From sequence record MK250017.1: DNA of 64,000 bases, one strand, 5' to 3'. The position numbers and the translations under genes are program-made. Below are positions 1,117 to 59,137 of the stretch, one piece after another. The stretch's first letter is position 1; every line of letters starts with the position of its first letter. Under the pieces are notes generated by a model. That model was not told the origin of the DNA, searched no databases, and was given only the letters and a program-made list of their open reading frames with translations.

Positions 1117-1126
1117 TTATATCTTT

Positions 1127-3097
1127 TTAGACCTCTTCGTATTCTGCTTCCTGAACGTTATCATCTGTCTTTGAATTCTCAGATGTTGAATTATTTGCAG
1201 TTGCATCACCAAAACCTGCATTTGCAAACATATCGTTAGGGTTTTGCGCAGAATTTTCCTGAGGTTGAGAACCACCAGCATTCTTATACATTTCTTCAAC
1301 AATTGGCTTAAATACTGTCTCAAGCTCTACACGTGCAGATTCTGCTGCAACAGCATCCTTCTTAGAAACTGCATCAAGTACTGCACTAATCTTTGTCTTC
1401 AATGTATCTTTCTTATCAGAAGGAATTGATGAACCTGTCTTCTCATCATCCATATACTTCTGAACCTGAGTTGCATACTGCTCTGCACCATTCAACTTAT
1501 CAACTTCATCCTTCTTCTTCTTATCTGCTTCTGCAAACTTCTCTGCATCTGCCTTAATACGTGCAATCTCTTCATCTGAAAGTGCATTAGGAGACTGAAT
1601 TGTTACCTTCTGCTCTTTATTTGTACCCTTATCTTTTGCTGTTACTTCAAGAATACCATCAGCATTAATATCAAATGTTACTTCAATCTGAGGAACACCC
1701 TTTGGTGCAGGTGCAATACCCTCCAAATTAAAATTACCAATTACCTTATTATCTGCAGACATTGGACGCTCACCCTGAAGAACCTTAATTGTTACTGCAG
1801 GCTGATTATCTACTGCTGTAGTAAATACCTGTGACTTACGTGTAGGAATAGTTGTATTTGCATCAATCAACTTTGCCATCTCACAACCATTTACCTCAAT
1901 ACCCAATGAAATTGGTGTTACATCAAGAAGAAGAACTGAATCTTCTGTTGCATTACCAGCAAGTGTATTTGCCTGAATTGCAGCACCAAGGGCAACAGCC
2001 TCATCAAAATTACAAGTCTTATTCAATGGCTTGTTAAATGACTTCTCCAATGCAGACTGAACTGAAGGAATACGAGAAGAACCACCAACCAAAAGAATCT
2101 CACTAATCTGATCTTCTGTAATACCTGCCTTCTCTACTGCACGATGTGCAATATCAACAACGTTATTTGTCAAATCTTCAGTAAGTCTCTCAAATGTTGC
2201 ACGATTAAGTGTCTTCATCAACATCTGTGGAACACCATCAGCAACAGTAATATAAGGAAGATTAATCTCTGTCTGAGTAGCTGTAGACAACTCACACTTT
2301 GCTTTCTCTGCTGCTTCTACAAGACGAGCATATGCCATCTTATCCTTACTCAAATCAATACCTGTATCGTTCTTAAACTCATCAATAAGCCACTGAACAA
2401 TAGCATTATCATAATTCTGTCCTCCAAGGAATACATCACCATCTGATGCAAGAACCTCAATCATACCATCAGAAATCTCTACAATGGATACATCTTCTGT
2501 ACCACAACCAAGGTCATTTACAAGAACAATCTTGTCACCATTTTTTGTATCAATATTAGAAGAAAGAACTGCTGCAGTAGGTTCATTAATAATACGAAGT
2601 ACATTCAAACCTGCCAACTGTCCAGCTACCTTAGTAGCATTACGCTGAATATCATTAAACCAAGCAGGAACAGTAATTACAGCATCTTTACAATCATCTG
2701 TTCCATAATATCCCTTTGCAACTTCATACATATTCTTAAGAATCATAGATGAAATTTGCTCAGGTGAATATGTTTTATCGTCAATCTTTAGACGAGGATT
2801 TCCATTTTCATCGACAACATCATATGTTACCATCTTCAACATTTTCTGTACATCTGGATCATCCCATTTTGCACCCATAAAACGTTTTACAAATGAAATG
2901 GTATTCTTTGGATTCATTACCATACCACGCTTTGCAGCTGCACCAATTTTTGTTTCATCACCTTTAATGTACACTACTGATGGCGTTGTCTTATAACCAT
3001 CTGCATTTTCAATTACCTTAGCTTTGTTTGCCTCGATGATGGCTACCGCACTGTTTCCAGTACCGAGGTCCAATCCAATAACTTTCTTGTTGCTCAT
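1127..3097 (-). CDS. dnaK: DnaK/Hsp70 chaperone, 656 aa
   Basis: IGLDLGTGNS, TVPAWFND.QR.ATK.AG..AGL.VLRIINEPTAA, LLVGGSSRIP, DEAVALGAAIQA, GVPQIEVTFDI. TAA stop, no TAG. Confidence 0.98.
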   Translation of the reverse strand: MSNKKVIGLDLGTGNSAVAIIEANKAKVIENADGYKTTPSVVYIKGDETKIGAAAKRGMVMNPKNTISFVKRFMGAKWDDPDVQKMLKMVTYDVVDENGNPRLKIDDKTYSPEQISSMILKNMYEVAKGYYGTDDCKDAVITVPAWFNDIQRNATKVAGQLAGLNVLRIINEPTAAVLSSNIDTKNGDKIVLVNDLGCGTEDVSIVEISDGMIEVLASDGDVFLGGQNYDNAIVQWLIDEFKNDTGIDLSKDKMAYARLVEAAEKAKCELSTATQTEINLPYITVADGVPQMLMKTLNRATFERLTEDLTNNVVDIAHRAVEKAGITEDQISEILLVGGSSRIPSVQSALEKSFNKPLNKTCNFDEAVALGAAIQANTLAGNATEDSVLLLDVTPISLGIEVNGCEMAKLIDANTTIPTRKSQVFTTAVDNQPAVTIKVLQGERPMSADNKVIGNFNLEGIAPAPKGVPQIEVTFDINADGILEVTAKDKGTNKEQKVTIQSPNALSDEEIARIKADAEKFAEADKKKKDEVDKLNGAEQYATQVQKYMDDEKTGSSIPSDKKDTLKTKISAVLDAVSKKDAVAAESARVELETVFKPIVEEMYKNAGGSQPQENSAQNPNDMFANAGFGDATANNSTSENSKTDDNVQEAEYEEV

Positions 3098-3199
3098 AAT
3101 TTTATTATGTATTTAATTTTTGTTGCTCAATAACTTCATATGTTAAACATACGGAGTTATTGTATAAATTTATTATTTAATTATTTTATATTCTATCTA

Positions 3200-3228
3200 T
3201 TTATAGAGAAAAAATTATAAATTGTCTA
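3200..3228 (-). promoter_or_regulatory. Sigma70-like promoter TAGACA-N17-TATAAA upstream of dnaK
   Basis: TAGACA at 3228-3223, exact 17-nt spacer, TATAAA at 3205-3200. The same architecture recurs at several sites. Confidence 0.6.
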
Positions 3229-3271
3229 TTTTTCTAATAATTTTTTTTTAATTTTATTTAATTATCTTTAT

Positions 3272-4141
3272 TCATTTCAATAATTTAGGTTTATTCCTTG
3301 CATTTCTTAAATTCATATCCATATAGCCTCCCATTGCCCAACGTCCTCTTGGTTCCATTTCTTCTAAAACTTCCATACGTCTTACACATATCGATTTCCA
3401 AAAATCTGTTGCTTCTTGTACTCTACTTCTCTTTCTATCTTTAAATGACGTTCCTTCATAATCGGTCCAATATCTTTGTGGAGCATCAGTATTTTCGATA
3501 CCTTCTTTTCTATTATTCACTTTTAATGCATTATTAGGAATAAATGAAAAAGCTTTATTACCGATACGTGACATAAAATTAGAAGCAGAACCTGGTTTCA
3601 ATTTACTTTCATCACCTTTTTTATGATAACCAGGATATGTAGCATCATTTGTTCCTATAAGATAACCATATGTTTTATCTTTTGGTTTATAATAAATTGA
3701 ATCTTGATTAAAATATTCAGCTAAAGATAAAAGATTATTTAAGAAATTAGGATCATTAAATCTATTTACAACAAAAAAACTTTCCTCTGATGACTCATTA
3801 TTCATTCCTTCTGGATATATTCCTTTTACGGTAGTTACACCATACTTTAAGTTTAATAATTCTGCTTTTAATAATTTATTTTTTTCTCGATTTTCTTCAT
3901 GAGTAAATATTTTTTTGTCCACCCAATTATCATTTGGACCATAATAAGTTTTATCTGGATTTGCAATGTCAATTAACTTATATCTAAATGCAGTAATAAA
4001 TGCACAATCACATTTATTTAACCATAACATCATACGGTTAAGTGATTTTTCATTTAACTCATTATTATATATTGCTATATTATTGAAATTATCAACTTCT
4101 TCTAATAATTTCTTTTTTATTGCATCATCAAAGTTATTCAT
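3272..4141 (-). CDS. Hypothetical phage protein, possibly DUF3293-like, 289 aa
   Basis: Open frame with TGA stop. Pattern AFITAFR...EENREKNKLLKAEL...YGVT.VKG.Y.E...EESFFV...AEYFNQDSI recalls DUF3293-like phage proteins (from memory, unverified). Confidence 0.7.
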   Translation of the reverse strand: MNNFDDAIKKKLLEEVDNFNNIAIYNNELNEKSLNRMMLWLNKCDCAFITAFRYKLIDIANPDKTYYGPNDNWVDKKIFTHEENREKNKLLKAELLNLKYGVTTVKGIYPEGMNNESSEESFFVVNRFNDPNFLNNLLSLAEYFNQDSIYYKPKDKTYGYLIGTNDATYPGYHKKGDESKLKPGSASNFMSRIGNKAFSFIPNNALKVNNRKEGIENTDAPQRYWTDYEGTSFKDRKRSRVQEATDFWKSICVRRMEVLEEMEPRGRWAMGGYMDMNLRNARNKPKLLK

Positions 4142-4154
4142 AATAAAATATTTT

Positions 4155-4649
4155 TTAATTATTTATATCCTCTCTAATAGAATGAAGTGTATTCAATATT
4201 TTTTGCTGCTTTCTTGTAAGTGCTTTCTTATTTCGTTTGAAAAAAATAATATAAAGAATATAACATCCTGGATCTCCATTTGGAAAATGAGTATCATTTC
4301 TATTTCCATTATACATAGAATATGTTGTTAAAATATCATAATCAACAAAATCATTTGGATTAAGATATGCACCAGGTACTTTATACCAATAATTAAACAT
4401 TTTTCTAATAACAGATTTTTTCACACGTCCAATACGTAATTGCATATACAAGTCTGTATGAAAATGCATGAGATGCGCTTGTACATCTCTCTTATCATAT
4501 TCATCTGGAATTCTATGTTCACGTTTTTGAATAGATTTTAATCTATTCTTTTTATACCAATTAATGTAAGGTATACATTTACTTTCCCAAAACTTATATT
4601 TATCAGACCATGCATTTCTTGCATGAACAACGCCACTTCTATATTTCAT
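4155..4649 (-). CDS. Hypothetical protein, 164 aa
   Basis: ATG..TAA ORF, tightly packed in the minus-strand run, no TAG. Confidence 0.75.
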   Translation of the reverse strand: MKYRSGVVHARNAWSDKYKFWESKCIPYINWYKKNRLKSIQKREHRIPDEYDKRDVQAHLMHFHTDLYMQLRIGRVKKSVIRKMFNYWYKVPGAYLNPNDFVDYDILTTYSMYNGNRNDTHFPNGDPGCYILYIIFFKRNKKALTRKQQKILNTLHSIREDINN

Positions 4650-4651
4650 AA

Positions 4652-5200
4652 TTAAATATACTTTTTATCTGTTTCACAAAAAATAGGTTTACAATCTTTA
4701 ATGCCAACCCATTGAACAAATTCGCCGAAAAGATTATATGCCTTTACTCTTGAACATGGTTTATTCAATAAAAGTATATAATATATCTTTCCTTTATGTT
4801 TAATCATTTTTAATTCTGAACTATTATCTTCTGATGAAATAGTAAGAGACATTTCATCTTGAAGATTTCTCATAATATTTTTACTATCATGAATAATAGC
4901 TTTATGATTTGGTAACATACTTATTAATGCTGTATATTCATCAATCGATTTATCTTCATTGATTTTAGTTGCAACATATTCTTTACCATTATGTTTCCAC
5001 TTTTCTGTTTTATTTGCAAATTGAGTATTTACAATCATACATGCATTTTTATAAGATATGTATTTATACCCATTTATATCTTTCTCCATAACACGACGAT
5101 CTTCACCATCATTCCATGGAGAAAGTTTAAGATAATGAGATGGCATAACCTTATATACAACCTCATTACAATCCTGTATATATTGTTTTTGATCGTCCAT
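4652..5200 (-). CDS. Hypothetical protein, 182 aa
   Basis: ATG..TAA ORF, 2 nt from the next gene, no TAG. Confidence 0.75.
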   Translation of the reverse strand: MDDQKQYIQDCNEVVYKVMPSHYLKLSPWNDGEDRRVMEKDINGYKYISYKNACMIVNTQFANKTEKWKHNGKEYVATKINEDKSIDEYTALISMLPNHKAIIHDSKNIMRNLQDEMSLTISSEDNSSELKMIKHKGKIYYILLLNKPCSRVKAYNLFGEFVQWVGIKDCKPIFCETDKKYI

Positions 5201-5253
5201 ATATTAATAATTTTATTTTCTACAACTATTTATATATAGAAAAATCAAAAAGT

Positions 5254-5673
5254 TTACTTCAACATATCTAAATAAAACTGTTTTTCTTCATCACTTGGAC
5301 ATTCCAAAATATGAAGTTCAAAAACAGGAGTTATTTTAATCAATTTCTGACTATATGTTTGCCAATGACTATATGATATATTGTTAAACTGTTTAAATGA
5401 ACCTATGAAATCTTTTATACAAATATTTTCATTAATTAAATCTGCAATAACATGAAATTCATCTTGTCCATTTAACAAATGAATATTACCAATATTATCT
5501 TTATATGCATTAATTTGAAATGTATCTCTGCACATAATTCGCAAAAACATTTTATTAATAAGTTTTTGCTTATCTATATTTTCATTAATGGACTCTTCAA
5601 ACTGTAAGACTTCTGAAGCTTTTAAGTTTTTAAGCTCATTATATGAAACTGTTTTTATATCAATATAAACCAT
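5254..5673 (-). CDS. Hypothetical protein, 139 aa
   Basis: ATG..TAA ORF in the gene run, no TAG. Confidence 0.7.
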   Translation of the reverse strand: MVYIDIKTVSYNELKNLKASEVLQFEESINENIDKQKLINKMFLRIMCRDTFQINAYKDNIGNIHLLNGQDEFHVIADLINENICIKDFIGSFKQFNNISYSHWQTYSQKLIKITPVFELHILECPSDEEKQFYLDMLK

Positions 5674-5678
5674 AATTC

Positions 5679-5894
5679 TTAAAATATTTTAAAATCTTTA
5701 TTTTCATATAAATTTGAAATAGGTTTAAACAATCTCAATACAATTAAACCTACTGCAACAACAAGAATTCCCCATAGTGAACCACTTGCAACCATAACAA
5801 AACCTTGATAAATTGCATAAAATGGTAAACAAATGATACCTAATACTGTCAAAAATAAAACAAATGTAAAGATATACTTAAATAATGTTGTCAT
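5679..5894 (-). CDS. Small membrane protein, 71 aa
   Basis: Two hydrophobic segments (YIFTFVLFLTVLGIICLPFYAIY; LWGILVVAVGLIVL). A TAnnTTTG promoter lies about 40 nt upstream. Confidence 0.75.
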   Translation of the reverse strand: MTTLFKYIFTFVLFLTVLGIICLPFYAIYQGFVMVASGSLWGILVVAVGLIVLRLFKPISNLYENKDFKIF

Positions 5895-5933
5895 AATTTT
5901 ATATTTTTTAATTGTTTATACTTTATTTATATT

Positions 5934-5944
5934 ACAAAGATACA
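5934..5944 (-). promoter_or_regulatory. Bacteroidota-type -7 promoter element (TGTATCTTTGT), copy 1 of 4
   Basis: Contains TAnnTTTG. The identical 11-mer recurs at 9749, 12341 and 59639, always upstream of a minus-strand start. Confidence 0.75.
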
Positions 5945-5963
5945 TATTTTATTTCAAATAAAA

Positions 5964-5997
5964 AAATCAGTTACCTAAAAAAATAGATAACTGATTT
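5964..5997 (-). terminator. Terminator hairpin after 6003..7388
   Basis: Stem AAATCAGTTA/TAACTGATTT with a T-run on the minus strand. Confidence 0.65.
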
Positions 5998-6002
5998 AAT
6001 AT

Positions 6003-7388
6003 TTAATAATACTTATCTCTCGAAATTTCATATGTATTTTCACTTTCATTAAAATCACATACAGAGTTATTATCTACATCAAATATAACCTGACGTGTTA
6101 ATTCAGTAACAACATATGGAGCATCAGAAGGCCAACGATATTTAAGATGTTTTGATGTCTTTGTATATGTACATATAAGTTTCCTATTATTTAAATTAAT
6201 ATTAATTTTATCAACATCTTTCTGATCACAAAAATAATGTGATTGATTATGTTTACCAATAATATATAATTTTTGATTTTTATTATATTCTGAACATTCT
6301 CTAATAATAGTTCTATATGCATAAGTTGCATCTGCCATCTTAGTTTTTGTTAAATCTATAATCTTATTATAATAGTTTTTATTGATATATTCAAGAATAT
6401 CATAATCAAGATAACCTGTCCATGGAGTTATCGCTATATTATCAATCATCTTATCGATTTCATCATTTGTAAAAATTTCAGAAATTAATAAATCAACATA
6501 TTCGCCATCGGATTCATAAGTTTTACTGAGTTTCACAATTTCTTCATTAAGATCTGCTTTCTTAACAGATTTAATATATGATTTATAACATGAATATGCA
6601 ACATCTTTTAAATCATTATTAATATCAATATGAATTATAGGCACATTTATCTGCTTTAAAACAGTTTTTAATTCTTCTTTATATATTTTATAAAACTCTT
6701 CTTTATATGAAGATGTAAGTTCTCTCATATAATCATATATTGATTTATCTCCAATAATATCAGATAATAATAATTTTAATGTACCATCTTTATCAATCCG
6801 TTTACTCTCACTTTTAGGATATATCTCTAATTTTCCATAAGTTGTAATAAAATGTTCTTTTTTATATTTCTTTAAAATAAAACCATTAAATGAAAAATAA
6901 TAAGCATTTTCTTTACAATCACAATAAGGCATCCAATAACGTTGTTCTAATGTTATATGTATAGTAAACAACTTTTTTCTTGATTTATCACATTGCTCTT
7001 TAAACTTAAACATTGCTCTAGAATATGCAAGTCTTTCATATCCTAAAAGTGATTTATAATTATAAGTACCATTATAAGAATCATCTAACCCTTCAAATTC
7101 ATTGTATAAATTAAATGTATCTGCATGTAGTGGTAAACCTGTTATCTTAATATTAAAGAAATTATATTCATTTTCTTTATATGAAGTATTTGTAAGTTTT
7201 GAGTATGTCAAAAGTTTACTTAAGAAAAACGATTTATAAAAATTTTGACATTCATTTATAAGAGCTTGTGCTTTATAATATTCTTCAACAAAATGACTTA
7301 AGTCTGAATAATTATTATAATCTGTCTTATGAAGTTCTACTAATGACTTTTCTTTATCATTAATATCAAATTTATCTATATTATTCAT
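6003..7388 (-). CDS. Hypothetical protein, 461 aa
   Basis: Long ATG..TAA ORF without TAG; no motif recognised. Confidence 0.8.
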   Translation of the reverse strand: MNNIDKFDINDKEKSLVELHKTDYNNYSDLSHFVEEYYKAQALINECQNFYKSFFLSKLLTYSKLTNTSYKENEYNFFNIKITGLPLHADTFNLYNEFEGLDDSYNGTYNYKSLLGYERLAYSRAMFKFKEQCDKSRKKLFTIHITLEQRYWMPYCDCKENAYYFSFNGFILKKYKKEHFITTYGKLEIYPKSESKRIDKDGTLKLLLSDIIGDKSIYDYMRELTSSYKEEFYKIYKEELKTVLKQINVPIIHIDINNDLKDVAYSCYKSYIKSVKKADLNEEIVKLSKTYESDGEYVDLLISEIFTNDEIDKMIDNIAITPWTGYLDYDILEYINKNYYNKIIDLTKTKMADATYAYRTIIRECSEYNKNQKLYIIGKHNQSHYFCDQKDVDKININLNNRKLICTYTKTSKHLKYRWPSDAPYVVTELTRQVIFDVDNNSVCDFNESENTYEISRDKYY

Positions 7389-7400
7389 TAAATTATTATT

Positions 7401-7868
7401 TTATAGTTCATACATCATATACTTATTATTGTAATAATATTCTTCATGATAATACATTCCATTACTAAATTCCCAAATTTGTTCTTTTGCTAAATTATTA
7501 TCTGACACAATATCATTCCAAACTTCAACACACATATCGCATGTACTTTCTAACTTACAACTTGGATTACATTTTAAAAATTCTTCTGGTGAAGACTGTA
7601 CAAAATTAGTTAAAACAAAATCACCTTTACCAATATTTAATTCACTAAAATATCCAATTCCATTATATCTTATTGTGAATCCCCATTCACCAGATACTTT
7701 ATAATAAAAAGCTTCATGATTATTTGGATTTACATATTTAAGAATATAAATATCATCAAAATTTCTATCCATACATATTTTCTTTAAATATATAGGAAAC
7801 CAAGGTAATATAATGTCAAAATGACTACTATATTTGGTTTTAATATCTGCTGTTTTTATTAATCCCAT
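7401..7868 (-). CDS. Hypothetical protein, 155 aa
   Basis: ATG..TAA ORF in the gene run. Confidence 0.75.
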   Translation of the reverse strand: MGLIKTADIKTKYSSHFDIILPWFPIYLKKICMDRNFDDIYILKYVNPNNHEAFYYKVSGEWGFTIRYNGIGYFSELNIGKGDFVLTNFVQSSPEEFLKCNPSCKLESTCDMCVEVWNDIVSDNNLAKEQIWEFSNGMYYHEEYYYNNKYMMYEL

Positions 7869-7870
7869 AA

Positions 7871-8368
7871 TTAAATATCATAATTCATAAATTTATTTGT
7901 CTTTTTAGTATTATTTGTTTTAGTATCTATTATTGCTTTGCCGAATTTATTACAATATGAAAATTCTAATGGTTCAAATATATTATATGTGTTATCAAAA
8001 GGTTTCCAAATAGAATTAAATTTATTACTATATCTAGAATTAAATTTATTACTATATGTAGAAAAAGATCTAACAGCAATAATATCACTTAATAATGTAT
8101 TATCTCTCAAATAATTAAATATTTCTTCTTTTATTTTTTTATATGTATTAGTATCTTCATCGCAAATAGTATATGTTAATATATTACGAATGAACCCAGT
8201 ATTTCCTACAAATTCATGTACAATATATTCTGCAAATTGCTCTGCATATTCATCTTCATTTGTATAACGAAATATAAATATTTTTATTGTATCATCATCA
8301 TTATTCCAATAATAAAAAACTTTATATATAGTTGATATATTATTAATCAAATTCTCATTAAATATCAT
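7871..8368 (-). CDS. Hypothetical protein, 165 aa
   Basis: ATG..TAA ORF with an internal 8-aa duplication. Confidence 0.7.
   Translation of the reverse strand: MIFNENLINNISTIYKVFYYWNNDDDTIKIFIFRYTNEDEYAEQFAEYIVHEFVGNTGFIRNILTYTICDEDTNTYKKIKEEIFNYLRDNTLLSDIIAVRSFSTYSNKFNSRYSNKFNSIWKPFDNTYNIFEPLEFSYCNKFGKAIIDTKTNNTKKTNKFMNYDI
8011..8058. repeat. In-frame 24-bp tandem duplication
   Basis: TAGAATTAAATTTATTACTATAT(C/G) occurs twice and encodes YSNKFNSR/YSNKFNSI. Confidence 0.9.
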
Positions 8369-8371
8369 ATA

Positions 8372-8770
8372 TTAAATTTCATATTTTGTATATGTTTTAT
8401 CTACATTTGAATAAACAGATTTCGCAGATAAATTCATGACTTCTAAAATATTATTATATTCTGCTTCAGTTATAAAAAATTTATTTCCAGATTTCAAAAT
8501 AACCGTATAATTTAATTCTTCATCTTCTCCATATTTCCTCATATCATTATTCATTTCAAGCGGTACTGCTAATGAAGATGATATAATATTTTGACAACTA
8601 TCTTTAAAACGTTTATCAAGACAAAGTCTTTTTACTGCATCACCTATATTTTCACCACATGCTTCTACCGTTTCGTATTCCAATAATTCATAAGGCCAAA
8701 CAGGACCAAACATTTCAATCTGTGAGATATTAAGTACAATACCATTATCTAATTTAATAAAACTATTCAT
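8372..8770 (-). CDS. Hypothetical protein, 132 aa
   Basis: ATG..TAA ORF in the gene run. Confidence 0.75.
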   Translation of the reverse strand: MNSFIKLDNGIVLNISQIEMFGPVWPYELLEYETVEACGENIGDAVKRLCLDKRFKDSCQNIISSSLAVPLEMNNDMRKYGEDEELNYTVILKSGNKFFITEAEYNNILEVMNLSAKSVYSNVDKTYTKYEI

Positions 8771-8785
8771 CTGCTTATCATAAAA

Positions 8786-9100
8786 TTAATCACGTTGTCC
8801 ATGATATATTTCAGTACTAGGTGGTTTTGGTAAATATATAAGTTTATTGGTATATCTCTGAAATGCTTCACAAAATGCTTTCATAATCACCATATTTTTA
8901 TAATAATCATGATATTCTTCTGAATTAATATCCGGCCTAGGAAATTCAGTATTCATTTTACCACTAATAAACTCATAACATTTATCAGTCAATCTATCAT
9001 AATCATATTTAGGAAGATCATATCCTCCAAACAATCTATCTCTCGTTACGTTATCTTTATTTTCTTCAATAAAAGATTTCAAAAAATCATCATATGTCAT
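8786..9100 (-). CDS. Hypothetical protein, 104 aa
   Basis: ATG..TAA ORF in the gene run. Confidence 0.7.
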   Translation of the reverse strand: MTYDDFLKSFIEENKDNVTRDRLFGGYDLPKYDYDRLTDKCYEFISGKMNTEFPRPDINSEEYHDYYKNMVIMKAFCEAFQRYTNKLIYLPKPPSTEIYHGQRD

Positions 9101-9115
9101 AATAACTAAAAATAA

Positions 9116-9151
9116 AAAGGTTACCTACCTTAATGTAGGTAAGTAACCTTT
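9116..9151 (-). terminator. Terminator hairpin after 9175..9648
   Basis: AAAGGTTAC...GTAACCTTT stem with inner CTAC/GTAG pairing and a T-run on the minus strand. Confidence 0.65.
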
Positions 9152-9174
9152 AGTAATATTAATAAATTAACTTA

Positions 9175-9648
9175 TTAATTTCCTTCTGTCATATCAACAG
9201 GCTCATCAACAGTATCATCCAAATCAATGTCAAGATCATCAATCTCAGACATCTCAAGAGCGAAACGGTCATCGTCATTAAAGTTCTTCAAGAACTTATC
9301 CATTACAAGCTTATACTTCGCAAGATCCTTCTTATCATGAATCTCCTCAACTCGAAGCTTAAAATCATTATCCCATGTATCAATGGTAAATCCCAAAAAC
9401 TTACGAGCTGAACAATTCTTCAAATCATCTGGACGAACACCATACTGCTCAATTCTTGCTGTAATATTTGCATCACCATCATGTACAGATGCACCTGCAC
9501 GAACAACATCGTCAATATTCATATTCTGTACCAAACCAAAAGGCTCACATGCTCGATTAGTCTTATACTCATACTTCTTACCTTCAAGCTGCTTTACCTT
9601 CTTTGCTGCAATCTTATACTTAGCAACAATCTCTTTACGTGTAATCAT
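9175..9648 (-). CDS. Hypothetical protein, 157 aa, probably highly expressed
   Basis: ATG..TAATAA. Codon choice (AAG, GAG, CGT) resembles dnaK. Two promoter types upstream and its own terminator. Confidence 0.85.
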   Translation of the reverse strand: MITRKEIVAKYKIAAKKVKQLEGKKYEYKTNRACEPFGLVQNMNIDDVVRAGASVHDGDANITARIEQYGVRPDDLKNCSARKFLGFTIDTWDNDFKLRVEEIHDKKDLAKYKLVMDKFLKNFNDDDRFALEMSEIDDLDIDLDDTVDEPVDMTEGN

Positions 9649-9795: not shown

Positions 9796-11034
9796 TTATT
9801 GTTTATTAATCCATTCTTTTACTTCATTAATATTCCAAAATTCTATATAATTCAAATTATTCTACTATGATATATTCCTTTTTTTCAAATCTAATATAGT
9901 CCATGTATAAATAATATTATCATATTGTGACTTCTTACCATTTTTATGTGCATTAGAATTTTCTGCTTTTTCTTTTAAGTTATTCAGCTCATTTAAATCA
10001 TATTCATTATTTTCATTAAATGGATGATAATGATGATAATGAGATCCGTTATATTCAATATATAAATCTAATGATGGTATATAAAAATCACAATTAAATG
10101 GATACAATTCTGATTTATATTGTCTAATACAATCTGAATATTTTTCTTTTAATAAATCAAAACATACATCTTCTTGATATGATATATTAAATGAATTATT
10201 TAATAATTTTGTATTATAAATTTTTTTCTATATTTCATTACTACTTAATATAGATGAAATTAAATTTTTATAGTATTGTGTCTANNNNNNNNNNNNNNNN
10301 NNNNNCTTTTCTAAACATGTATTTTTTATTTTATCTTTTACATATTTAAGTTGACCAATATTTACGATACTATTAATATCATCTTCATTAGAAGCATATT
10401 TTTTAATACATGTATCTAATGACTAATTTCGAAATTTTTGAACTTTAAATACAGAATCAACCCCATACTTTTCTAAACATGCTTTATAAGTTTTTTCTAT
10501 TTTTTCAGGAATCTAACCTGTATACTCAACACCATATTTTTGTAAACATGTTTCTTTTGATTTTTGTTTAAATATTTCAGATTTTAAAGGGGATGTTACT
10601 CCATATCTTTGTAAACATGTTTCTCTTGCTTTAATTCTATTAGAATAATGTTCATCTCCATATTTTAATAAACATGTTTCTCTTATTTTATTATTAATCT
10701 CTTGCTTTTTATCTACATCACTATATATGTCTTTTAATACTTTTTTAACTGTTATACCATCTAACATATTTGCATGTTCTTTACAACATGTTTTATTAAA
10801 TAATTGATTCTTTTTACCATTCAAAAATTTAACAGGTTTTCCACAAATAACACATACAGGGCGAACCTCTATATTATACTGTATTCTCTTAATTGTTTCT
10901 CTTAATGACTATGAATCAGTATAGCGATTATCTAAATATTCCTTATACCCCTCAGAAATATTAGTTAATCGCTATACATTTATATGTCCATTAGATTTAA
11001 TAAAATAATCTAATATAATCTAATCTGTTACCAT
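9796..11034 (-). CDS. Homing-endonuclease-like PD-(D/E)XK (Vsr/DUF559-type) protein, TAG=Gln, spans an N-gap
   Basis: One frame from ATG 11034 to TAA 9796 through at least 9 TAG and a 21-N gap. N-terminal CVICG...TCC, repeated ETCLxKYGV units, C-terminal CDFYIPSLDLYIEYNG..H and NLNYIEFWN. Confidence 0.8.
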
Positions 11035-16728: not shown

Positions 16729-17166
16729 AATTACTGGTAATTTGAGAATGATAGAATATATAGATTTTTGATTAGTGAAATTTTGATTAGTTAATATTAT
16801 TTAGAATTTGTATAAATTAACATAAAAATAATATTGATTATCAATCAGTTATAAATTATTTTTTAACATTTATTAAAAATATTTAGAAAAATGTAGACTT
16901 TTTCTTAAAACNNNNNNNNNNNNNNNNNNNNNNNNNNNNNNNTTGAGATAGATATTATACATAATATGTAAAAAAATTAAATATATTTTTTAATAATTTA
17001 ATAAGGTAAGCCTTTCGGAAATGTAAATATATTTTGAATATGGTATAGAAATATTTTTTATTTTTATATCATATTTTTATTTTATAGTATATAAAACATT
17101 ATTAATAATTATTAGTAAAATATATGATAAAGTTTTATATTTACTTATTATAATTACTTTAATTTG

Positions 17167-53341: not shown

Positions 53342-54439
53342 TTAAACTAATGTAGATATAAACTTTTGCATATTCTTATATGTATGTAAATATTTTGGAG
53401 CAATTTTTTTATATACATAATGCATGTAGTAATCATTAATAAATGCGCTTAATTTTGTTCCAAATGTTTTATAATCAACAGCATCTGTAAAATAGTTTAT
53501 ATAATTCTTATCAAATAAATCATTCATCTGTTTAATTGTTTTATCAGATGGATTACATTCATTTAATGTATTTGTTATATAATAAAATAATTTTATAGGA
53601 TCTTGTCCACATAATCCATTTATTGCTTGCGAATAATTACCGAATGTTTTATATACAATAGCATAACTGTAAATAAAACATGCATAATCATTATTATTCA
53701 ATGCAGGAGTTTCTATATATTTTAATATATCATCTTTAGTTGCATTTGGATTCTTTTTTGTATATACCATCATATTTTGAACAAATGAATGATACCATGC
53801 ATTTAATTCAGTTGGTTGTGAAACATAAAGAAAAGTTTTTAATGATTTATATGTTGTATCATTCTTTAATAATGCTTCTTTTATTTTTTCTTTAAATACT
53901 TGATTGTTAATATCAAATTCATCAGCTATTAATGTAATATGAAGTAATTCTTTTAATGGACCTCCAAATACGCCCATTATATTATCATAATAATGTCTAA
54001 GTTCATGATATACATATTCTTTAAGTTCATCTGTTAATTCTTCTTTATTACCTGTATAACCTTTAAAAGTATTATAGTTAATATAAATATAACCACAATT
54101 ATTTTTCTTTTTATCTACTGTAGAATCAACAGGTGAATAAAATGCGGCTTCATCATCATCAATAAATCCTTGAAATTTATAAGATGTATTAACTTTATCT
54201 GTATCTATATTAACTAATATAACTTTAATAAAACCTAATTTAGGATTATCTAAATCAAATGTAAATGTATGATAAAGAAAACCTTCAAGATCTTTCACAT
54301 TAGGTTTACCTTTTACTTCGTAATTAGTATCCCAATGAATATCAGGAGATGTCATAAATTCAACCATTGAATTTACAACATTATCTAAATTAAATTGTTT
54401 CTAATCGATATATCCTATTTTTTCTGTAATTGATTTCAT
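53342..54439 (-). CDS. HEXXH zincin-like protein, 365 aa, one TAG at codon 13
   Basis: YVYHELRHYYD plus downstream PTELNAWYH. In-frame ATG at 54439 extends the track ORF. Confidence 0.7.
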
Positions 54440-54482
54440 AATAATTAACTTTATTTATAATGTATTTATTTCTATTAAAAAG

Positions 54483-54523
54483 AAAAGAGATAACAGAATA
54501 ATGTATAAACTGTTATCTCTTTT
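54483..54523 (-). terminator. Terminator hairpin
   Basis: AAAAGAGATAACAG/CTGTTATCTCTTTT stem. Confidence 0.8.
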
Positions 54524-54534
54524 ATATCGTATTA

Positions 54535-54912
54535 TTACTTCAATAATTTTAGATGTCTTACATAATTTTGAGGAATCTTATAACATGCAATTGCTGTTAT
54601 TTGATTATTCAAATCAGGTTCTTTGAATACACTCATTTCTTCATCTTTACTAATATATAATCTTCTTTTCATTTGATTAATGAAGTTATCAAGATCACAT
54701 GATAAGTAAACTACTGTATCATTTTGCCATTCACTATTTGGATGTTCAATCAGAAACTGCGCTATTGCATGTCCACCTTGAACTGCTCCATAAATAGGAA
54801 CTAATTTATTACTTACTAAAACATAAAGTTTTTTATTTGTTTCTAATTCATGTGGAACAAATTGTTTTTTTTTATTAATGATTTTTTTAATTATTAATTT
54901 TACTTTCCTCAT
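54535..54912 (-). CDS. Peptidyl-tRNA hydrolase PTH2-like protein
   Basis: KLYVLV...AVQGGHAIAQF...WQNDTVVYL...FKEPDLNNQITAIA...LKLL, the phage PTH2-like pattern. No TAG. Confidence 0.75.
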   Translation of the reverse strand: MRKVKLIIKKIINKKKQFVPHELETNKKLYVLVSNKLVPIYGAVQGGHAIAQFLIEHPNSEWQNDTVVYLSCDLDNFINQMKRRLYISKDEEMSVFKEPDLNNQITAIACYKIPQNYVRHLKLLK

Positions 54913-55273
54913 AATTAGAAGCTTTATATTTTTTTATTAATTGCTGTATTCTCTTATAAAGATAATAATATTCATTAGTAAATGTTTGATATGAAAACAT
55001 ATAATGTTTTTTATATGTTTCATTACAGTATACTAAATATTTTTTTTGTTCATCTAAATTAAGATTATGTTTAACAATATAATATGCAACATTTATTGCA
55101 TGTATATCTTCTAATGTTTCTTCTAACTTAGATTTAGCATTACTTGTTTCTTCAAGATTATAATTTTCATCTTTTGATGATCTATTAGCAATTAATTTTA
55201 ATTCTTTTCTTTTTGCTATTTCAGATTTAAGATATTTCTTAAATTCAATTAAATTTTCATTAAGTGTTTTCAT
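54887..55273 (-). CDS. Hypothetical protein, 128 aa
   Basis: ATG..TAA, overlaps the start of the PTH2-like gene. Confidence 0.7.
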   Translation of the reverse strand: MKTLNENLIEFKKYLKSEIAKRKELKLIANRSSKDENYNLEETSNAKSKLEETLEDIHAINVAYYIVKHNLNLDEQKKYLVYCNETYKKHYMFSYQTFTNEYYYLYKRIQQLIKKYKASNYEESKINN

Positions 55274-55420
55274 TTTCTTCTTTAATTTGTTTTATTTTTA
55301 TAATAGTGTAATAATTATTTTAAATCAAAAATAAACAAATTAAAGGTGAACCTCTACTTAATGTAACTTACCAATGTTGAAGTTTCATAATTTTCTTTTT
55401 ATCATTTTTTAAAAAAATTA

Positions 55421-55508
55421 GTAGAATGATAGAATTTGATTCGCACAAATTTTCCTGTCTTTGAGATCTCTACACAGATTTTATCGATTATTAAACTACT
55501 ATCTCTAC
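55421..55508 (-). ncRNA. tRNA-like cloverleaf with abnormal anticodon arm
   Basis: Acceptor GTAGA-GATAG / CTATC-(AT)-TCTAC; TA linker; D-arm GTTT..AAAT; stem CTGT/ACAG around a 15-nt loop; T-arm ATTTG-TGCGAAT-CAAAT. Confidence 0.45.
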
Positions 55509-55527
55509 TTCTGTTTGCAAACCATTG

Positions 55528-55599
55528 TGCTCTATACAGGGATCGAACCCGTGATCTGGAAGTTTAAAATTTCCTGCTGTACCGCTTAGCTAATAGAGC
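55528..55599 (-). tRNA. tRNA with UUA anticodon (ochre/amber suppressor type)
   Basis: GCTCTAT/ATAGAGC acceptor, A73, D-arm GCT..AGC with GG, anticodon arm GGAAA-TTTTAAA-CTTCC (anticodon TTA, A31xC39 mismatch), T-arm ACGGG-TTCGATC-CCTGT. CCA not encoded. Confidence 0.88.
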
Positions 55600-55675
55600 A
55601 ATTAAAAATAATCATTACTTCTAATAAAATAATGTAATGATTATTTTATTTTTAAAAATTAAACACTGTTTATTA

Positions 55676-55855
55676 TTACTTTGTCTTTGAAGCCTCAATA
55701 GACTCCTTACGGAATGTCTTAAGCAACTTCTCAATTGCAAGAGAAGCCTTACGTGCACGCTGACCAGCTGCCTTATTACCCTTATCTGTCTGTGCAGTTG
55801 CATCTGCCTGGAAAGCTGCAAATGCCTCATTAATACTTGTCAAAATCTCATTCAT
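55676..55855 (-). CDS. Histone-H1-like (Hc1-type, Bacteroidota family) protein, 59 aa
   Basis: MNEILTSINEAFAAFQADATAQTDKGNKAAGQRARKASLAIEKLLKTFRKESIEASKTK contains the KGNKAAG.RARK.S signature. Ends TAATAATAA. The track shows the wrong frame here. Confidence 0.85.
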   Translation of the reverse strand: MNEILTSINEAFAAFQADATAQTDKGNKAAGQRARKASLAIEKLLKTFRKESIEASKTK

Positions 55856-55871
55856 AATTGTTTTCTTAAAA

Positions 55872-56079
55872 TTAATTTTTATTTATGATTTTATTATTCT
55901 CCCATGTTTTGCTCCAATTTGCATCTGTTTTTAAATGTTGAAAACGAACATATTTGCCTACATTCTTATCAAAATCATTATAATTAAAACTATCTGCATT
56001 TCGTACTACAAAACCTTCAACTTCTTGTGATTTATGTAAATCACAATAATCAGAGAATGCTTTAATAATATTCTTAATA
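55872..56079 (-). pseudogene. Split RNA ligase, piece 3 (C-terminal)
   Basis: (N)IKNIIKAF...EVEGFVVRNADSF...KNVGKYVRFQHLKTDANW: motifs IV and V, then TAA. Confidence 0.88.
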
Positions 56080-57566
56080 TTAAATAATTCACTTATAACA
56101 TATATAACTTTAATATTATATATGACATATATATGATTTGTCTGAAGTGAATCTAGAAAACTACAGATTAAACTAATCTATAGAAAGTCTATATTTAATT
56201 TTAGACTTTTTGAAGAAGTAATATAGTTCAATCAAATCCTTGTATGTAGGTTGTAAATTAAATTCTTCCAACGACTCAAGATACAACTTATTAAACATAC
56301 TCAAATTCGGTCTTATTATATTCTTTTTAATTTCTTTTGTTTTACTTATATATTGATTATAAAACTCATAACCACGCCTACCTATTTCTATTGATGCTAA
56401 TATCATATCAGGTAAATTTAATGAACGATATAGAAAATTACCAATAAAACTTGAATATTCTGGTTTAACTTTTAATAACTTAATATTATGAATATTACAA
56501 CGTTTAGTTAAATTATTCACAAATGTTGTTCTACACCATGAATTATTAACCAATTTATTAAAATATACACCTAAATCTTTATCTGAAGTTTTGATATTTA
56601 AATTCTCTATAGAAATAAGTTGACATTTATAATATATAGATTTATTAATTATATTCTTTACAATTTGTAAAGTCTCATAATTTCTCTTATCTGAAATATA
56701 TTTTCTTTCATTTGAATCAGATGAATATCCTTTATTCTTTAAATTAAAATCTTTATCATTCAATTTTTTAATTGAATAAATACCTGATTTGATAACATCA
56801 AATTCATTTTCAGATTTCCAATCAACAATAGACCATCCTATATAATTAGGATTTAAATCCAAAGATAGTACTCTATTTTTTATAAATTTAGTTTCATAAT
56901 TATAAACATCATTTTCTTCAAATATCACATAAATATATTCTAAATCTAATTTATATGCAATCTTTATTTCTTTTCTTTCTTGTTTCTAATATAGTTTAGA
57001 TAATATCTACTTTCTTTTATTTAATCCAATTAACCATAAATTTATTTTTGTATGTTTATTTGGTTTAAATATAATATTTTCTAAATCTTGTTCTATGTGA
57101 AATTTTCTATTTCCTTTAACTGATTTATTAACTATTTCACCTATTGAATATAAAGCCGATAATCTTTTCTACTTAAACTATTCTTTTGAAATATTGTTCT
57201 TTAATCTCTAAAAATAATTCTTCTTACTGCCAAATATAATTTTCTATTTCTTTGGTATATCATAGAAAGAACATTGAATAAACCAACTATCTAACAAATA
57301 TATATTGTTTAATGTTTTTATTTGTTGTTTTATATCTTTCTAAGATTTACCTTCCTATACTCTATTGTATACAAAATGCTGTACAGAACTATACTATTTC
57401 ATATAATTCCGTATAATATCTAATGATTGTTCATCCGTTCGATATTTAATCTTTAATACTTGCATTTTTAATTGTATATAATATTATATTCTTTTATTAT
57501 TTATCTGAATAATTTTAAAAAATAATAAATTCTTATAAAATATAAATTATAAGGTATTATTATATT
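56080..57566 (-). mobile_element. TnpB-only element B (about 1,487 bp) inserted in the RNA ligase gene
   Basis: Lies exactly between ligase codons ...GTG TAT AA | T ATT AAG. Left flank TATAA, right end TTTAA, subterminal hairpin CTTATAA-N8-TTATAAG. No tnpA. Confidence 0.82.
56116..57465 (-). CDS. tnpB: TnpB-like RuvC nuclease lacking the Zn finger, 449 aa, 11 TAG=Gln
   Basis: RuvC-I VLSLDLNP, RuvC-II ISIENL, VKPEYSSFIGN...LPDMILASIEIGRRG (RuvC-III). The track shows only the TAG-free middle. Confidence 0.78.
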
Positions 57567-57768: not shown

Positions 57769-59137
57769 TTAAATAACAGTATGTTAAAACTTGAACAAAT
57801 TTGAACTTTGCTCTTTATTAACTTCTTGCTTCACTCTATCACTACTTTTTAGGTTCATTTCTGAACGGTCATCCATAGTTGGATAGTCCACAAGCTTAAA
57901 TTCGGGTGTACTGCACCCTATTATTCTTAAACCTTCATCAAGTATATTTAGTGCTGCATTGTAATCTCTATTAATAAGTTTACCACAATTAGGACAGGTC
58001 CATTCTCTATCACTCAATTTTAATTTCTTAAAAATATAACCACAACAGTTACATGTTTTACTTGATGGATAAAATCTATCTACAAATACTATCTTTCTGT
58101 TATACCATCTTGCTTTATACTCTAATATTCTTCGGAATTCACCAAAATTCATTTCTAAAATACTTTCAGCAAGTTTATGGTTCTTAACCATACCTTTCAC
58201 ATTTAAGTCTTCCATACATATAACTTGGTTTTCGTCAATGAGTGAATTACTTACATAGTGAAGATAGTATTGTTTTCTATCATTTATTGTTTTATATACT
58301 TTAGCAAGTTTAATTCTTGCTTTATTTCTGTTGTTACTTCCTTTTTGTTTTCTTGAAAGTTGTTTTTGAAGTTTATTTAACTTAATTATCTCATTCTTTT
58401 TAAAATGTAAGTTATTGAATACTTCTCCTTCTGATGTGATGATAAAATCTTTTACACCAAGGTCAATACCTACACAATTATCACTATCTTGTAATCCTTT
58501 ATGTATTAAATCACCATCAACCAATATTGACAAATAATATTCACCGCAAGGTAGTTTAGATAATGTTGCTTGTCTAATATTATCATGATGTTTTTGTAAA
58601 TATTGTACATATTTTTTATTACATCTGAACTTAATATTCTTTATATTAGCAAGAGATAACTAATATGTTGTATAATCATTCTTTCTTGAGATGGTACCGA
58701 TTTCAAATCTACAGCTTTGTTTGTTATCATGTTTTGATTTGAATTTTGGATACCCTGTATGTTGTTTAAAGAAACGTTTATATGCATCTAACATATCCAT
58801 TATAGATTGTTTAAGAACTTTTGTATTCTGTTCTCTGAGCCATATAAAATTATCATCTTTCAATAGTTCATGATGAAACCAATAACTGAGTGTAGATCTG
58901 TTTTCAGAAATATTATGTTCTTTATATTGATTTATTTTTCGAGCAAGTGTTTGATTATATACAAAACGACAACAACCAAGCAACTTATTAATTTGTGTTG
59001 CTTGTTCCATATTTGGGTATAATCTTATTTTTATTGCTCTTAACATAATTTATTTTTTTGTTTATTTCTTTTTTCTCTTATTTATTTAAATAATTTTTAT
59101 AAAAATGTACAATATTGTTCAAATTATTTATTTACTA
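57769..59137 (-). mobile_element. TnpB-only element A (about 1,369 bp) inserted in the RNA ligase gene
   Basis: Lies between ligase codons TTA A | TT CCT. An 11-bp direct repeat TGTTATTTAAT (59137-59147 and 57768-57778) makes the exact border slide. No tnpA. Confidence 0.85.
57784..59046 (-). CDS. tnpB: IS605-type TnpB nuclease, 420 aa, one TAG=Gln
   Basis: N-terminal KIRLYPN.EQ...GCCRFVYN, GIDLGVK (D), CMEDLNV (E), SSKTCNCCG/CPNCG Zn finger, NRDYNAALNI (D). Track ORFs 58660..59046 and 57784..58533 join across one TAG. Confidence 0.92.

What the first reader, a model, noticed from the sequence alone, without database searches (positions are those of the whole stretch)
55528..55599. tRNA with a UUA anticodon in a genome whose main stop codon is UAA
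Seen: a canonical 72-nt cloverleaf with loop UU-UUA-AA, an A31xC39 mismatch, G1-C72/C2-G71 and A73. Established: a U34 UUA anticodon can read both UAA and UAG. Code-15 phages are normally credited with CUA suppressors, and tRNA-Gln identity usually involves U1-A72 and G73, which this tRNA lacks. It is one base from a Lys UUU loop. Inference: it may be an auxiliary UAG decoder tuned down by the stem mismatch, a partial UAA readthrough device (for example to disturb host termination), or a decoy for host anticodon nucleases. The amino acid it carries is unknown.
Basis: partly seen in the sequence, partly recalled or inferred. Interest (0 to 1): 0.85.

Follow-up and report, generated by a model that had tools for sequence, protein, structure and literature searches.

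The report
Known ochre-anticodon tRNA of Lak megaphage
This is a real, conserved tRNA gene with a UUA (stop-codon-reading) anticodon in Prevotella megaphage Lak-A1; it is already published as the unexplained "Sup-TTA" tRNA present in every Lak phage, and here it proves to be lysine-like rather than glutamine-like, with no sign that TAA is used as a sense codon.

Summary
A canonical tRNA lies at window 55528-55599 on the minus strand, with anticodon UUA, an A31·C39 mismatch, G1-C72, C2-G71 and A73.

The window is identical to Prevotella phage Lak-A1 (MK250016.1, 234,678-298,677). This gene is already listed as "Sup TTA" in Devoto 2019. Crisci 2021 reports it in 51 of 51 Lak genomes, with no evidence that TAA is recoded.

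- **Selection:** three acceptor-stem pairs change compensatorily between Lak-A and Lak-B. The anticodon, the mismatch and the position about 77 nt after an Hc1 histone-like gene are all kept.
- **Not Gln-type:** both Lak tRNA-Gln genes and both CUA suppressors start U1, G2-C71. This tRNA does not; its body and loop look Lys-like.
- **TAG is Gln:** TAG exchanges with CAA/CAG between Lak-A1 and Lak-B1, with no excess of Lys codons.
- **TAA is a stop:** I found no conserved in-frame TAA.
- **CUA suppressors are not missing:** Lak-B1, B3, B6 and B9 carry one split by a 245-nt insertion.

Best guess: a deliberately weak, host-charged, probably Lys-accepting reader of UAA that also reads UAG by wobble. 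Its benefit is unresolved. The feature is real and puzzling but already known.

The parts
55528..55599 (-). tRNA gene with anticodon UUA (the 'Sup-TTA' tRNA of Lak phages); 72 nt, no encoded CCA
   Evidence: ARAGORN; Rfam RF00005 at 57.7 bits; listed as 290276-290205 Sup TTA in Devoto 2019 Table S2B
55565..55567 (-). anticodon U34 U35 A36
   Evidence: unchanged in all Lak orthologues; no difference is listed here in run contigs X1, X15 and X17
55562..55570 (-). anticodon loop bounded by the conserved A31 (55570) · C39 (55562) mismatch
   Evidence: flagged as a non-standard pair by cmscan; kept in all six distinct Lak variants
55610..55642 (-). A/T-rich hairpin (9-bp arms, 15-nt loop) between the Hc1 gene and the tRNA; role unknown (processing site or weak terminator)
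   Evidence: read directly from the sequence; not called by the terminator scan, which needs at least 3 G-C pairs
55676..55855 (-). 59-aa histone H1-like Hc1 gene, TAG-free, immediately upstream of the tRNA on the same strand; likely co-transcribed
   Evidence: Pfam PF07432, E 2.9e-22; the Hc1-tRNA arrangement is kept in Lak-B1; RNA-library contigs X15 and X17 span both
53342..55273 (-). three downstream same-strand ORFs (128, 125 and 365 aa) of unknown function, syntenic with the tRNA in Lak-B1

Best explanation
This is a functional phage tRNA gene that behaves as a deliberately weak ochre-type suppressor. It is transcribed with or just behind the Hc1 gene. Its CCA end comes from the phage's CCA-adding enzyme. 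Host enzymes modify and charge it. It then pairs with UAA (cognate) and, through U34 wobble, with UAG. Its body is not Gln-type. By the known rules for xUA-anticodon tRNAs with A73 it is most likely charged with lysine by host LysRS. A four-pair anticodon stem closed by A31·C39 should keep its activity low. So should competition from release factors, including the phage's own RF2. TAA therefore stays the working stop codon and TAG stays Gln through the dedicated CUA tRNAs. I lean towards low-level UAA readthrough or modulation of termination as the purpose, rather than main TAG decoding. Shown here: the gene, its structure, its conservation, its non-Gln features, the absence of TAA recoding, and TAG = Gln. 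Inferred: charging, the amino acid, decoding efficiency and the biological benefit.
For: - **Bona fide tRNA:**
- **Purifying selection on the fold:** the 3-70, 4-69 and 5-68 pairs change on both sides between Lak-A and Lak-B, while G1-C72, C2-G71, A73, the anticodon and A31·C39 stay fixed. Nine of 19 pairs show double changes once a 78%-identical relative is added.
- **Conserved context:** synteny Hc1, about 77 nt, tRNA, orf128, orf125, orf365 is kept in Lak-B1.
- **Published distribution:** present in 51 of 51 Lak genomes (PMC8346664).
- **Non-Gln body:** Lak Gln-UUG, Gln-CUG, CUA-1 and CUA-2 all have U1 and G2-C71; this tRNA has G1-C72 and C2-G71.
- **Lys-like traits:** A73, U34 and U35; the loop is CUUUAAA in most variants. 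The D-arm and AGAUC variable loop are identical to a bacterial tRNA-Lys(CUU) (L208). The nearest typed phage tRNAs by blastn are Lys and Asn.
- **Dependence on the host:** no phage LysRS-class or GlnRS-class synthetase, MnmA or MiaA.
- **Termination and tRNA-maturation factors:** the phage encodes RF2 and a CCA-adding enzyme.
- **Low cost of readthrough:** the median extension is 5 codons. A second in-frame stop follows TAA directly in 14.5% of genes against 9-10% in the other frames, p 2e-4.
- **Not tied to TAG recoding:** UUA tRNAs also occur in phage phiKp24 and phage G, where no recoding is described, and in metagenome contigs where reading TAG as sense adds little ORF cover.
- **Expression hint:** RNA-library contigs cover Hc1 and the tRNA in one piece, with patchy cover unlike the DNA run.
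Against: - No charging, modification or decoding data exist.
- The Lys assignment rests on E. coli identity rules and modest sequence similarity (68-74% to typed tRNAs). Host Prevotella tRNAs and synthetases could not be examined.
- No conserved readthrough target was found, so no benefit of UAA suppression is visible.
- One lineage, seen in RNA-library contig X15, carries 6 changes in 72 nt against 10 in 566 nt of flank. At least two are uncompensated (Fisher p 0.005). That suggests relaxed constraint there.
- The A31·C39 mismatch is not kept in the 78%-identical non-Lak relative L088.
- RNA-library contigs do not prove transcription.
Confidence: 0.4

Rival explanations
1. Auxiliary UAG decoder. 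The tRNA's real job is to read the roughly 1,300 in-frame TAG codons by U34·G wobble alongside the CUA tRNAs, helping to outcompete host RF1. The phage RF2 protects TAA from it.
For: It is universal in a TAG-recoded clade. It lies inside a TAG-rich block of the genome. Wobble reading of UAG by UUA tRNAs is established in E. coli ochre suppressors (own knowledge) and in Tetrahymena (cited in PMC10553269). The phage RF2 reads UAA and UGA but not UAG. A minor Lys-for-Gln substitution would be mild, since CAA changes to AAA often between A1 and B1.
Against: The tRNA lacks the U1 and G2-C71 features shared by all Gln-type Lak tRNAs. TAG exchanges with Gln codons and shows no extra Lys signal: 42 of 871 TAG codons align with Lys codons, the same rate as for CAA and CAG. 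Every Lak A, B and C genome examined has at least one CUA tRNA once the interrupted copy is counted. UUA tRNAs also occur in phages where no recoding is described.
Confidence: 0.28
2. Non-decoding role. It could be a decoy or competitor for a host anticodon nuclease or another tRNA-Lys-directed defence, or another structural RNA function.
For: The anticodon loop is Lys-like. Lak encodes an Rnl2-type RNA ligase (Devoto Table S7), which hints at a conflict over tRNA cleavage and repair. A second Lak tRNA-Lys(UUU) has an unusual A33.
Against: Strict conservation of the UUA triplet and of a full aminoacylatable cloverleaf points to decoding. No nuclease or defence gene is linked to it. The idea rests on analogy only.
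Confidence: 0.08
3. Nearly neutral relic. A former Lys-type tRNA that acquired U36A and now persists with little activity.
For: The anticodon stem is weak. One lineage has uncompensated changes. A27·C43 occurs in variant L118.
Against: It is present in 51 of 51 genomes. Compensatory changes and kept synteny separate Lak-A and Lak-B, while the flanking intergenic DNA is too diverged for blastn.
Confidence: 0.08
4. True but sparse TAA recoding. A few Lak genes contain functional in-frame TAA codons read by this tRNA.
For: One Lak-B1 TnpB copy has a clean in-frame TAA with full conservation downstream. The giant 2,499-aa gene has a 61-codon open extension after its TAA in both A1 and B1.
Against: Same-frame neighbouring genes are 149 of 430, which is the chance value of one third. 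Spacers after TAA show non-triplet indels and extra stops in B1. The TnpB case is one of at least 4 copies and looks like a recent nonsense mutation. Crisci 2021 reached the same negative conclusion.
Confidence: 0.04

Closest known systems
Lak megaphage 'Sup-TTA' tRNA (Devoto et al. 2019, PMC6784885, Table S2B; Crisci et al. 2021, PMC8346664)
   Same: It is the same gene, at MK250016.1 290205-290276. It has been reported in all 51 high-quality Lak genomes. The authors state that its relevance is uncertain and that nothing else suggests TAA is recoded.
   Different: Nothing differs. This report adds compensatory changes, non-Gln and Lys-like features, linkage to Hc1, tests for TAA recoding, and the interrupted CUA tRNA in Lak-B.
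E. coli ochre suppressor tRNAs, especially supG/supL (tRNA-Lys with anticodon UUA)
   Same: Anticodon UUA, A73, a Lys-type anticodon loop with U36 changed to A, dual reading of UAA and UAG, and necessarily low efficiency in a genome that stops at UAA (established genetics, from my own knowledge).
   Different: Those are laboratory mutants of a cellular tRNA. This one is a natural, clade-wide phage gene with its own diverged body and a conserved 31·39 mismatch. Suppression here is untested.
Ciliate tRNA-Sup(UUA): Tetrahymena tRNA-Gln(UUA), and the Lys-like UUA tRNAs of Oligohymenophorea sp. PL0344 (PMC10553269)
   Same: UUA and CUA suppressor tRNAs coexist. In PL0344 the UUA tRNAs are Lys-like and the CUA tRNAs are of another type. 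That raises the same question of how wobble is kept from mixing UAA and UAG.
   Different: In ciliates UAA is a sense codon. In Lak TAA is the main stop, ending 89% of genes.
Sup-TTA tRNAs of large phages with no described recoding (Klebsiella phage phiKp24, PMC8386662; Bacillus phage G, PMC12484599)
   Same: A predicted ochre-anticodon tRNA in a large phage genome with a big tRNA set, and function unknown.
   Different: No stop-codon recoding is described for those phages. Their tRNAs are not sequence relatives of the Lak tRNA.
Gln-type CUA suppressor tRNAs of code-15 phages (Lak, crAss-like and others)
   Same: A phage-encoded tRNA that reads a stop codon in a TAG-recoded genome.
   Different: The CUA tRNAs of Lak share U1 and G2-C71 with tRNA-Gln and read only UAG. 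This tRNA has G1-C72 and C2-G71, and its cognate codon is the working stop.

Membership tests
Canonical elongator tRNA (Rfam RF00005) | Cloverleaf with a 7-bp acceptor stem, D-loop GG, T-loop UUCGAUC, and a 7-nt anticodon loop with U33 | tested here: met
   57.7 bits against a gathering score of 29, covering model positions 1-71; ARAGORN
Canonical elongator tRNA (Rfam RF00005) | Base pairs maintained by compensatory change in relatives | tested here: met
   3-70, 4-69 and 5-68 change on both sides between Lak-A and Lak-B; 9 of 19 pairs show double changes
Ochre suppressor tRNA | Anticodon 5'-UUA-3' complementary to UAA | tested here: met
   conserved in all orthologues
Ochre suppressor tRNA | Measurable readthrough of UAA (and UAG) in vivo | not testable with these tools
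   Needs reporter assays or proteomics
tRNA-Lys-derived suppressor (supG/supL type) | LysRS identity set: U35, U34, A73; Lys-type loop C32 U33 ... A37 A38 | tested here: met
   U34, U35 and A73 are present. The loop is CUUUAAA in Lak-C1, Lak-B and most contigs, and UUUUAAA in Lak-A1. U36 is A by definition.
tRNA-Lys-derived suppressor (supG/supL type) | Clear sequence descent from a tRNA-Lys | tested here: inconclusive
   The D-arm and variable loop are identical to a bacterial tRNA-Lys(CUU), L208, and the nearest typed phage hits are Lys and Asn. Overall identity to any typed tRNA is only 68-74%. Host tRNAs were not available.
Gln-type recoding suppressor tRNA (code-15 phages; ciliate tRNA-Gln UUA) | U1-A72 (weak first pair), G2-C71 and G3-C70, as in tRNA-Gln | tested here: not met
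   This tRNA has G1-C72, C2-G71 and U3-A70. The four Lak Gln-type tRNAs all have U1 and G2-C71.
Gln-type recoding suppressor tRNA (code-15 phages; ciliate tRNA-Gln UUA) | The codon it reads is used as a sense codon in the genome | tested here: not met
   No conserved in-frame TAA was found. TAG is a sense codon but is served by CUA tRNAs.
Theta (HDV-like) ribozyme-linked suppressor tRNA (PMC10879173) | A self-cleaving ribozyme directly downstream of the tRNA | tested here: inconclusive
   No Rfam match at E<=5 in 55250-55900. The 3' flank differs between Lak-A and Lak-B right after CACA. I could not confirm that Rfam 15 holds a theta model.

The most novel reading that the evidence does not exclude
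Lak phages deliberately split the UAR box three ways. UAG is Gln through Gln-type CUA tRNAs. A Lys-type UUA tRNA gives a tuned, low level of UAA-to-Lys readthrough, aimed at host or phage proteins. A variant phage RF2, with SPY in place of the SPF recognition tripeptide, sets the balance at UAA. The stop signal of an infected cell would then be an engineered, graded quantity.
Probability: 0.12. Interest if true: 0.8.

Novelty: already known. Interest (0 to 1): 0.4.

Why it matters
Why UAA and UAG almost always share one meaning is a standing question in genetic-code evolution; the usual answer is wobble by UUA tRNAs. Lak phages keep a UUA tRNA while giving the two codons opposite meanings, so they must solve the wobble problem in some way. 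The candidate solutions are weak tRNA activity, U34 modification, or release-factor balance. If the tRNA is charged and active, infected Prevotella cells would carry stop-codon ambiguity made by the phage. That bears on host shut-off, on annotation of megaphage proteomes, and on orthogonal translation tools. The observation itself is already published, so the value here lies in narrowing the hypotheses rather than in discovery.

Tried and rejected
- **Own genome:** none is held for this window. I fetched GenBank record MK250016.1 instead and masked the two N runs of the window (10285-10305 and 16912-16942) in my copy without reading them.
- **TAA recoding, three tests, all negative.** The frame relation of neighbouring genes is at chance. 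Spacers after TAA are not conserved as coding in Lak-B1. Conserved post-TAA extensions are explained by tightly packed in-frame neighbours.
- **Apparent in-frame TAA in Lak-B1:** most cases lie in poorly aligned, gapped regions. The clean one is a single TnpB copy.
- **TAA recoding in unrelated contigs with UUA tRNAs:** the apparent ORF gains came from several genes joined across clusters of TAA in the spacers. Rejected.
- **Group I intron or ribozyme:** none was found by Rfam in the Lak-B1 insertion or next to the UUA tRNA.
- **More diverged orthologues:** two IMG/VR pattern scans returned only seven near-identical Lak copies.
- **Phage-encoded enzymes:** LysRS-class and GlnRS-class synthetases, MnmA and MiaA are all absent.
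- **Host tRNAs:** Prevotella tRNAs could not be obtained. The single genome-collection scan went on the D-arm pattern.
- **Promoters and terminators:** the scan near the tRNA gave no more sites than shuffled sequence.
- **Literature:** a search for 'TAA suppressor' with 'phage' found nothing.

Full report
**What is there**

ARAGORN finds a single tRNA in the 64-kb window, at 55527-55599 on the minus strand, with anticodon UUA. Rfam's tRNA model matches 55528-55599 at 57.7 bits against a gathering score of 29. It is the only RNA family hit in the window.

Read from the minus strand, the acceptor stem is G1-C72, C2-G71, U3-A70, C4-G69, U5-A68, A6-U67, U7-A66. The discriminator is A73, and no CCA is encoded. 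The D-stem has three pairs plus A13·C22. The anticodon stem has four pairs closed by A31·C39. The anticodon loop is UU-UUA-AA.

The covariance-model alignment marks exactly 13·22 and 31·39 as non-standard pairs.

**Where the window comes from**

The window is identical, with 0 mismatches outside the two N runs, to Prevotella phage Lak-A1, MK250016.1 positions 234,678-298,677. I masked the N positions in my working copy and did not read them.

Table 11 breaks most genes between 9.8 and 59 kb. Reading TAG as a sense codon restores long, tightly packed ORFs. Of the 35 complete ORFs in the window, 32 end in TAA and 3 in TGA.

My own ORF call on the whole record gives 572 genes. Of these, 511 end in TAA and 61 in TGA, and 211 genes contain 1,298 in-frame TAG codons.

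**It is already published**

Devoto et al. 2019 list "290276-290205 Sup TTA" for Lak-A1 and its counterparts in Lak-A2, C1 and B1-B9 (Table S2B). They write that the relevance of the Sup tRNAs other than CTA is uncertain.

Crisci et al. 2021 report that 51 of 51 Lak genomes encode a tRNA predicted to bind TAA. Only 38 of 51 have a detectable CTA suppressor. They found no other evidence that TAA is recoded.

Sup-TTA tRNAs are also reported in the large phages phiKp24 and G, for which no stop-codon recoding is described.

**Conservation**

The tRNA is present with anticodon TTA in all 15 GenBank Lak genomes, in 7 IMG/VR contigs and in 10 metagenome contigs.

Between the Lak-A/C and Lak-B clades, three consecutive acceptor pairs change on both sides. 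U3-A70 becomes A-U, C4-G69 becomes U-A, and U5-A68 becomes G-C. Meanwhile G1-C72, C2-G71, A73, the anticodon and the A31·C39 mismatch stay fixed. Position 32 is U in Lak-A1 and C in most others.

Adding a 78%-identical non-Lak relative (L088), 9 of 19 pairs show double changes.

The flanking intergenic DNA is too diverged for blastn, but the gene order is kept in Lak-B1. It runs Hc1, about 77 nt of spacer, the tRNA, then orf128, orf125, orf365 and orf237. The 449-aa ORF upstream in Lak-A1 is a multicopy mobile gene that lies elsewhere in Lak-B1. Contigs from other samples all break at window 56082.

There is one caution. A variant in RNA-library contig X15 has 6 changes within the tRNA against 10 in 566 nt of flank (Fisher p 0.005). 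At least two of them are uncompensated, although the anticodon is intact.

**Expression**

Metatranscriptome-library contigs from two studies (X15, X17) run in one piece from about 70-80 nt beyond the tRNA's 3' end, through the tRNA and the Hc1 gene, to 56082. Cover across the region is patchy in the RNA libraries, whereas the DNA run is flat.

This fits co-transcription with Hc1 but does not prove it, because DNA can be present in such libraries. The simple promoter and terminator scan was uninformative.

**Which kind of tRNA is it**

Lak-A1 has 33 Rfam-level tRNAs. The UUA tRNA is a singleton that lies far from the two large tRNA clusters.

Lak-A1 also has two CUA (amber) tRNAs, at 225,330-225,401 and 226,235-226,308, just outside the window. 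These two, together with tRNA-Gln(UUG) and tRNA-Gln(CUG), all begin with U1 (paired with A72, or unpaired in one case) and G2-C71, and all have A73. The UUA tRNA has G1-C72 and C2-G71 instead.

By the E. coli rules (own knowledge), GlnRS needs a weak 1-72 pair plus G2-C71 and G3-C70. tRNAs with an xUA anticodon and A73 that lack Gln features tend to be taken by LysRS. That makes Lys the likeliest charge.

Three observations are consistent with this:
- The nearest annotated phage tRNAs by blastn are Lys and Asn.
- A scan of 185,579 species' genomes for its D-arm found tRNA-Lys(CUU) most often, in 10 of 40 hits. One of these (L208) shares an identical D-arm, A26 and the AGAUC variable loop.
- The loop in most variants equals a Lys loop with U36 changed to A.

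The support is only moderate. Identity to any typed tRNA is 68-74%, the same D-arm also occurs in Cys, Asn, Met and Gln tRNAs, and host tRNAs were not available.

The phage encodes no LysRS-class or GlnRS-class synthetase, MnmA or MiaA. Charging and modification must therefore be done by the host.

**Is TAA ever a sense codon**

Among 430 adjacent same-strand gene pairs, 149 are in the same frame, which is the chance value of one third.

For the pairs with the longest stop-free spacers after TAA, the Lak-B1 orthologous regions show non-triplet indels, extra stops or no alignment.

Of 268 TAA stops aligned to a TAA in Lak-B1, the long conserved extensions are explained by in-frame neighbours that have their own ATG.

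Apparent in-frame TAA codons in Lak-B1 fall mostly in poorly aligned regions. The one clean case is a single copy of a TnpB gene with at least four copies (GAA to TAA), most simply a recent nonsense mutation.

This agrees with Crisci et al.: TAA is a stop.

**What TAG means**

Of the 871 TAG codons of Lak-A1 aligned to Lak-B1, 456 stay TAG. A further 162 are CAA and 44 are CAG. Only 42 are Lys codons, which is the same proportion as seen for CAA and CAG themselves.

TAG therefore behaves as a Gln synonym, with no trace of Lys.

**Are CUA suppressors really missing in some Lak genomes**

Lak-B1, B3, B6 and B9 have no CUA tRNA in the published table. Lak-B1 412,033-412,350 is nevertheless a CUA-2-type tRNA split by a 245-nt insertion. 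The 5' part ends CUCU, the insertion ends in G, and the 3' part starts AAAUCU. Removing the insertion would restore a CU-CUA-AA loop.

Lak-B2, B4, B5, B7 and B8 align only downstream of that locus. In B5, ARAGORN finds an intact CUA-1-type tRNA there, and Devoto's table lists one at the matching place in B2 and B4. B7 and B8 were not checked.

The argument that the UUA tRNA must be the only TAG decoder in genomes "without" a CUA tRNA is therefore weak.

**Cost of readthrough**

After a TAA stop, the next in-frame stop comes after a median of 5 codons. It follows immediately in 14.5% of genes, against 9-10% in the other two frames (p 2e-4). The base after TAA is T in 54% of genes and A in 38%.

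Weak UAA suppression would therefore add only short tails to phage proteins.

**Synthesis**

The gene is real, under selection, and requires the UUA triplet, so a decoding role is the simplest reading. It is not of the Gln type that serves TAG, and TAA is not a sense codon.

I therefore favour a weak, probably Lys-accepting ochre-type suppressor. It would be held down by its poor anticodon stem and by release factors, including the phage's RF2.

Whether its pay-off is extra competition against RF1 at UAG, low-level UAA readthrough (of host or phage genes), or buffering of nonsense mutations cannot be decided from sequence.

**Verdict**

As an observation the feature is already known, and its function remains open.

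Noticed in passing
MK250016.1 368058-369194 (outside the window; L216:823-1956): The Lak RF2 has SPY where E. coli RF2 has the SPF stop-codon-recognition tripeptide. GGQ is intact and there is no frameshift site. The same SPY is found in Lak-B1. It may bear on how the phage separates UAA/UGA from UAG.
   Followed up: partly
Lak-B1 MK250020.1 412033-412350 (L167:12033-12350): A CUA suppressor tRNA is interrupted by a 245-nt insertion between U35 and A36. It is identical in Lak-B1, B3, B6 and B9, the genomes listed without a Sup-CTA. Lak-B2, B4 and B5 have an intact CUA tRNA at the same locus; B7 and B8 were not checked. Rfam recognises no intron family there.
   Followed up: partly
window 56116-57465 and 57784-59046 (minus strand): A 449-aa multicopy ORF with no Pfam match sits next to a TnpB (OrfB_IS605 / Cas12f1-like TNB). 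Contigs from other samples all diverge at window 56082, so this is an insertion polymorphism beside the tRNA module.
   Followed up: partly
Lak-B1 MK250020.1 230749-231882: One of at least four TnpB copies carries a clean in-frame TAA (GAA in the Lak-A1 paralogue), with full-length conservation after it. It is either a fresh pseudogene or a candidate for ochre suppression.
   Followed up: partly
MK250016.1 215842-215914 (outside the window): One of the two Lak-A1 tRNA-Lys(UUU) genes has A instead of the near-universal U at position 33 of the anticodon loop (sequence).
   Followed up: no
window 1-9648: This block of genes has no in-frame TAG at all, next to the TAG-rich block from 9.8 to 59 kb. 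The two CUA tRNAs lie about 8-9 kb before the window start.
   Followed up: no
window 55676-55855 (minus strand): A 59-aa histone H1-like Hc1 protein gene (Pfam E 2.9e-22) is encoded by the phage. It is TAG-free and has the deepest cover in one RNA library.
   Followed up: no
L092, L097, L109, L111, L113 (metagenome contigs, 27-31% GC): An unrelated, recurrent UUA-anticodon tRNA with an encoded CCA lies next to tRNA-Asn in several AT-rich contigs. Reading TAG as sense adds little ORF cover there. The apparent gains from reading TAA as sense are artefacts of joined neighbouring genes.
   Followed up: partly
L213 (Rivularia sp. chromosome, OZ245371.1): A CUA-anticodon tRNA in a cyanobacterial genome shares the G1-C72, C2-G71, U3-A70 acceptor start, the D-arm type and A73 with the Lak UUA tRNA.
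   Followed up: no
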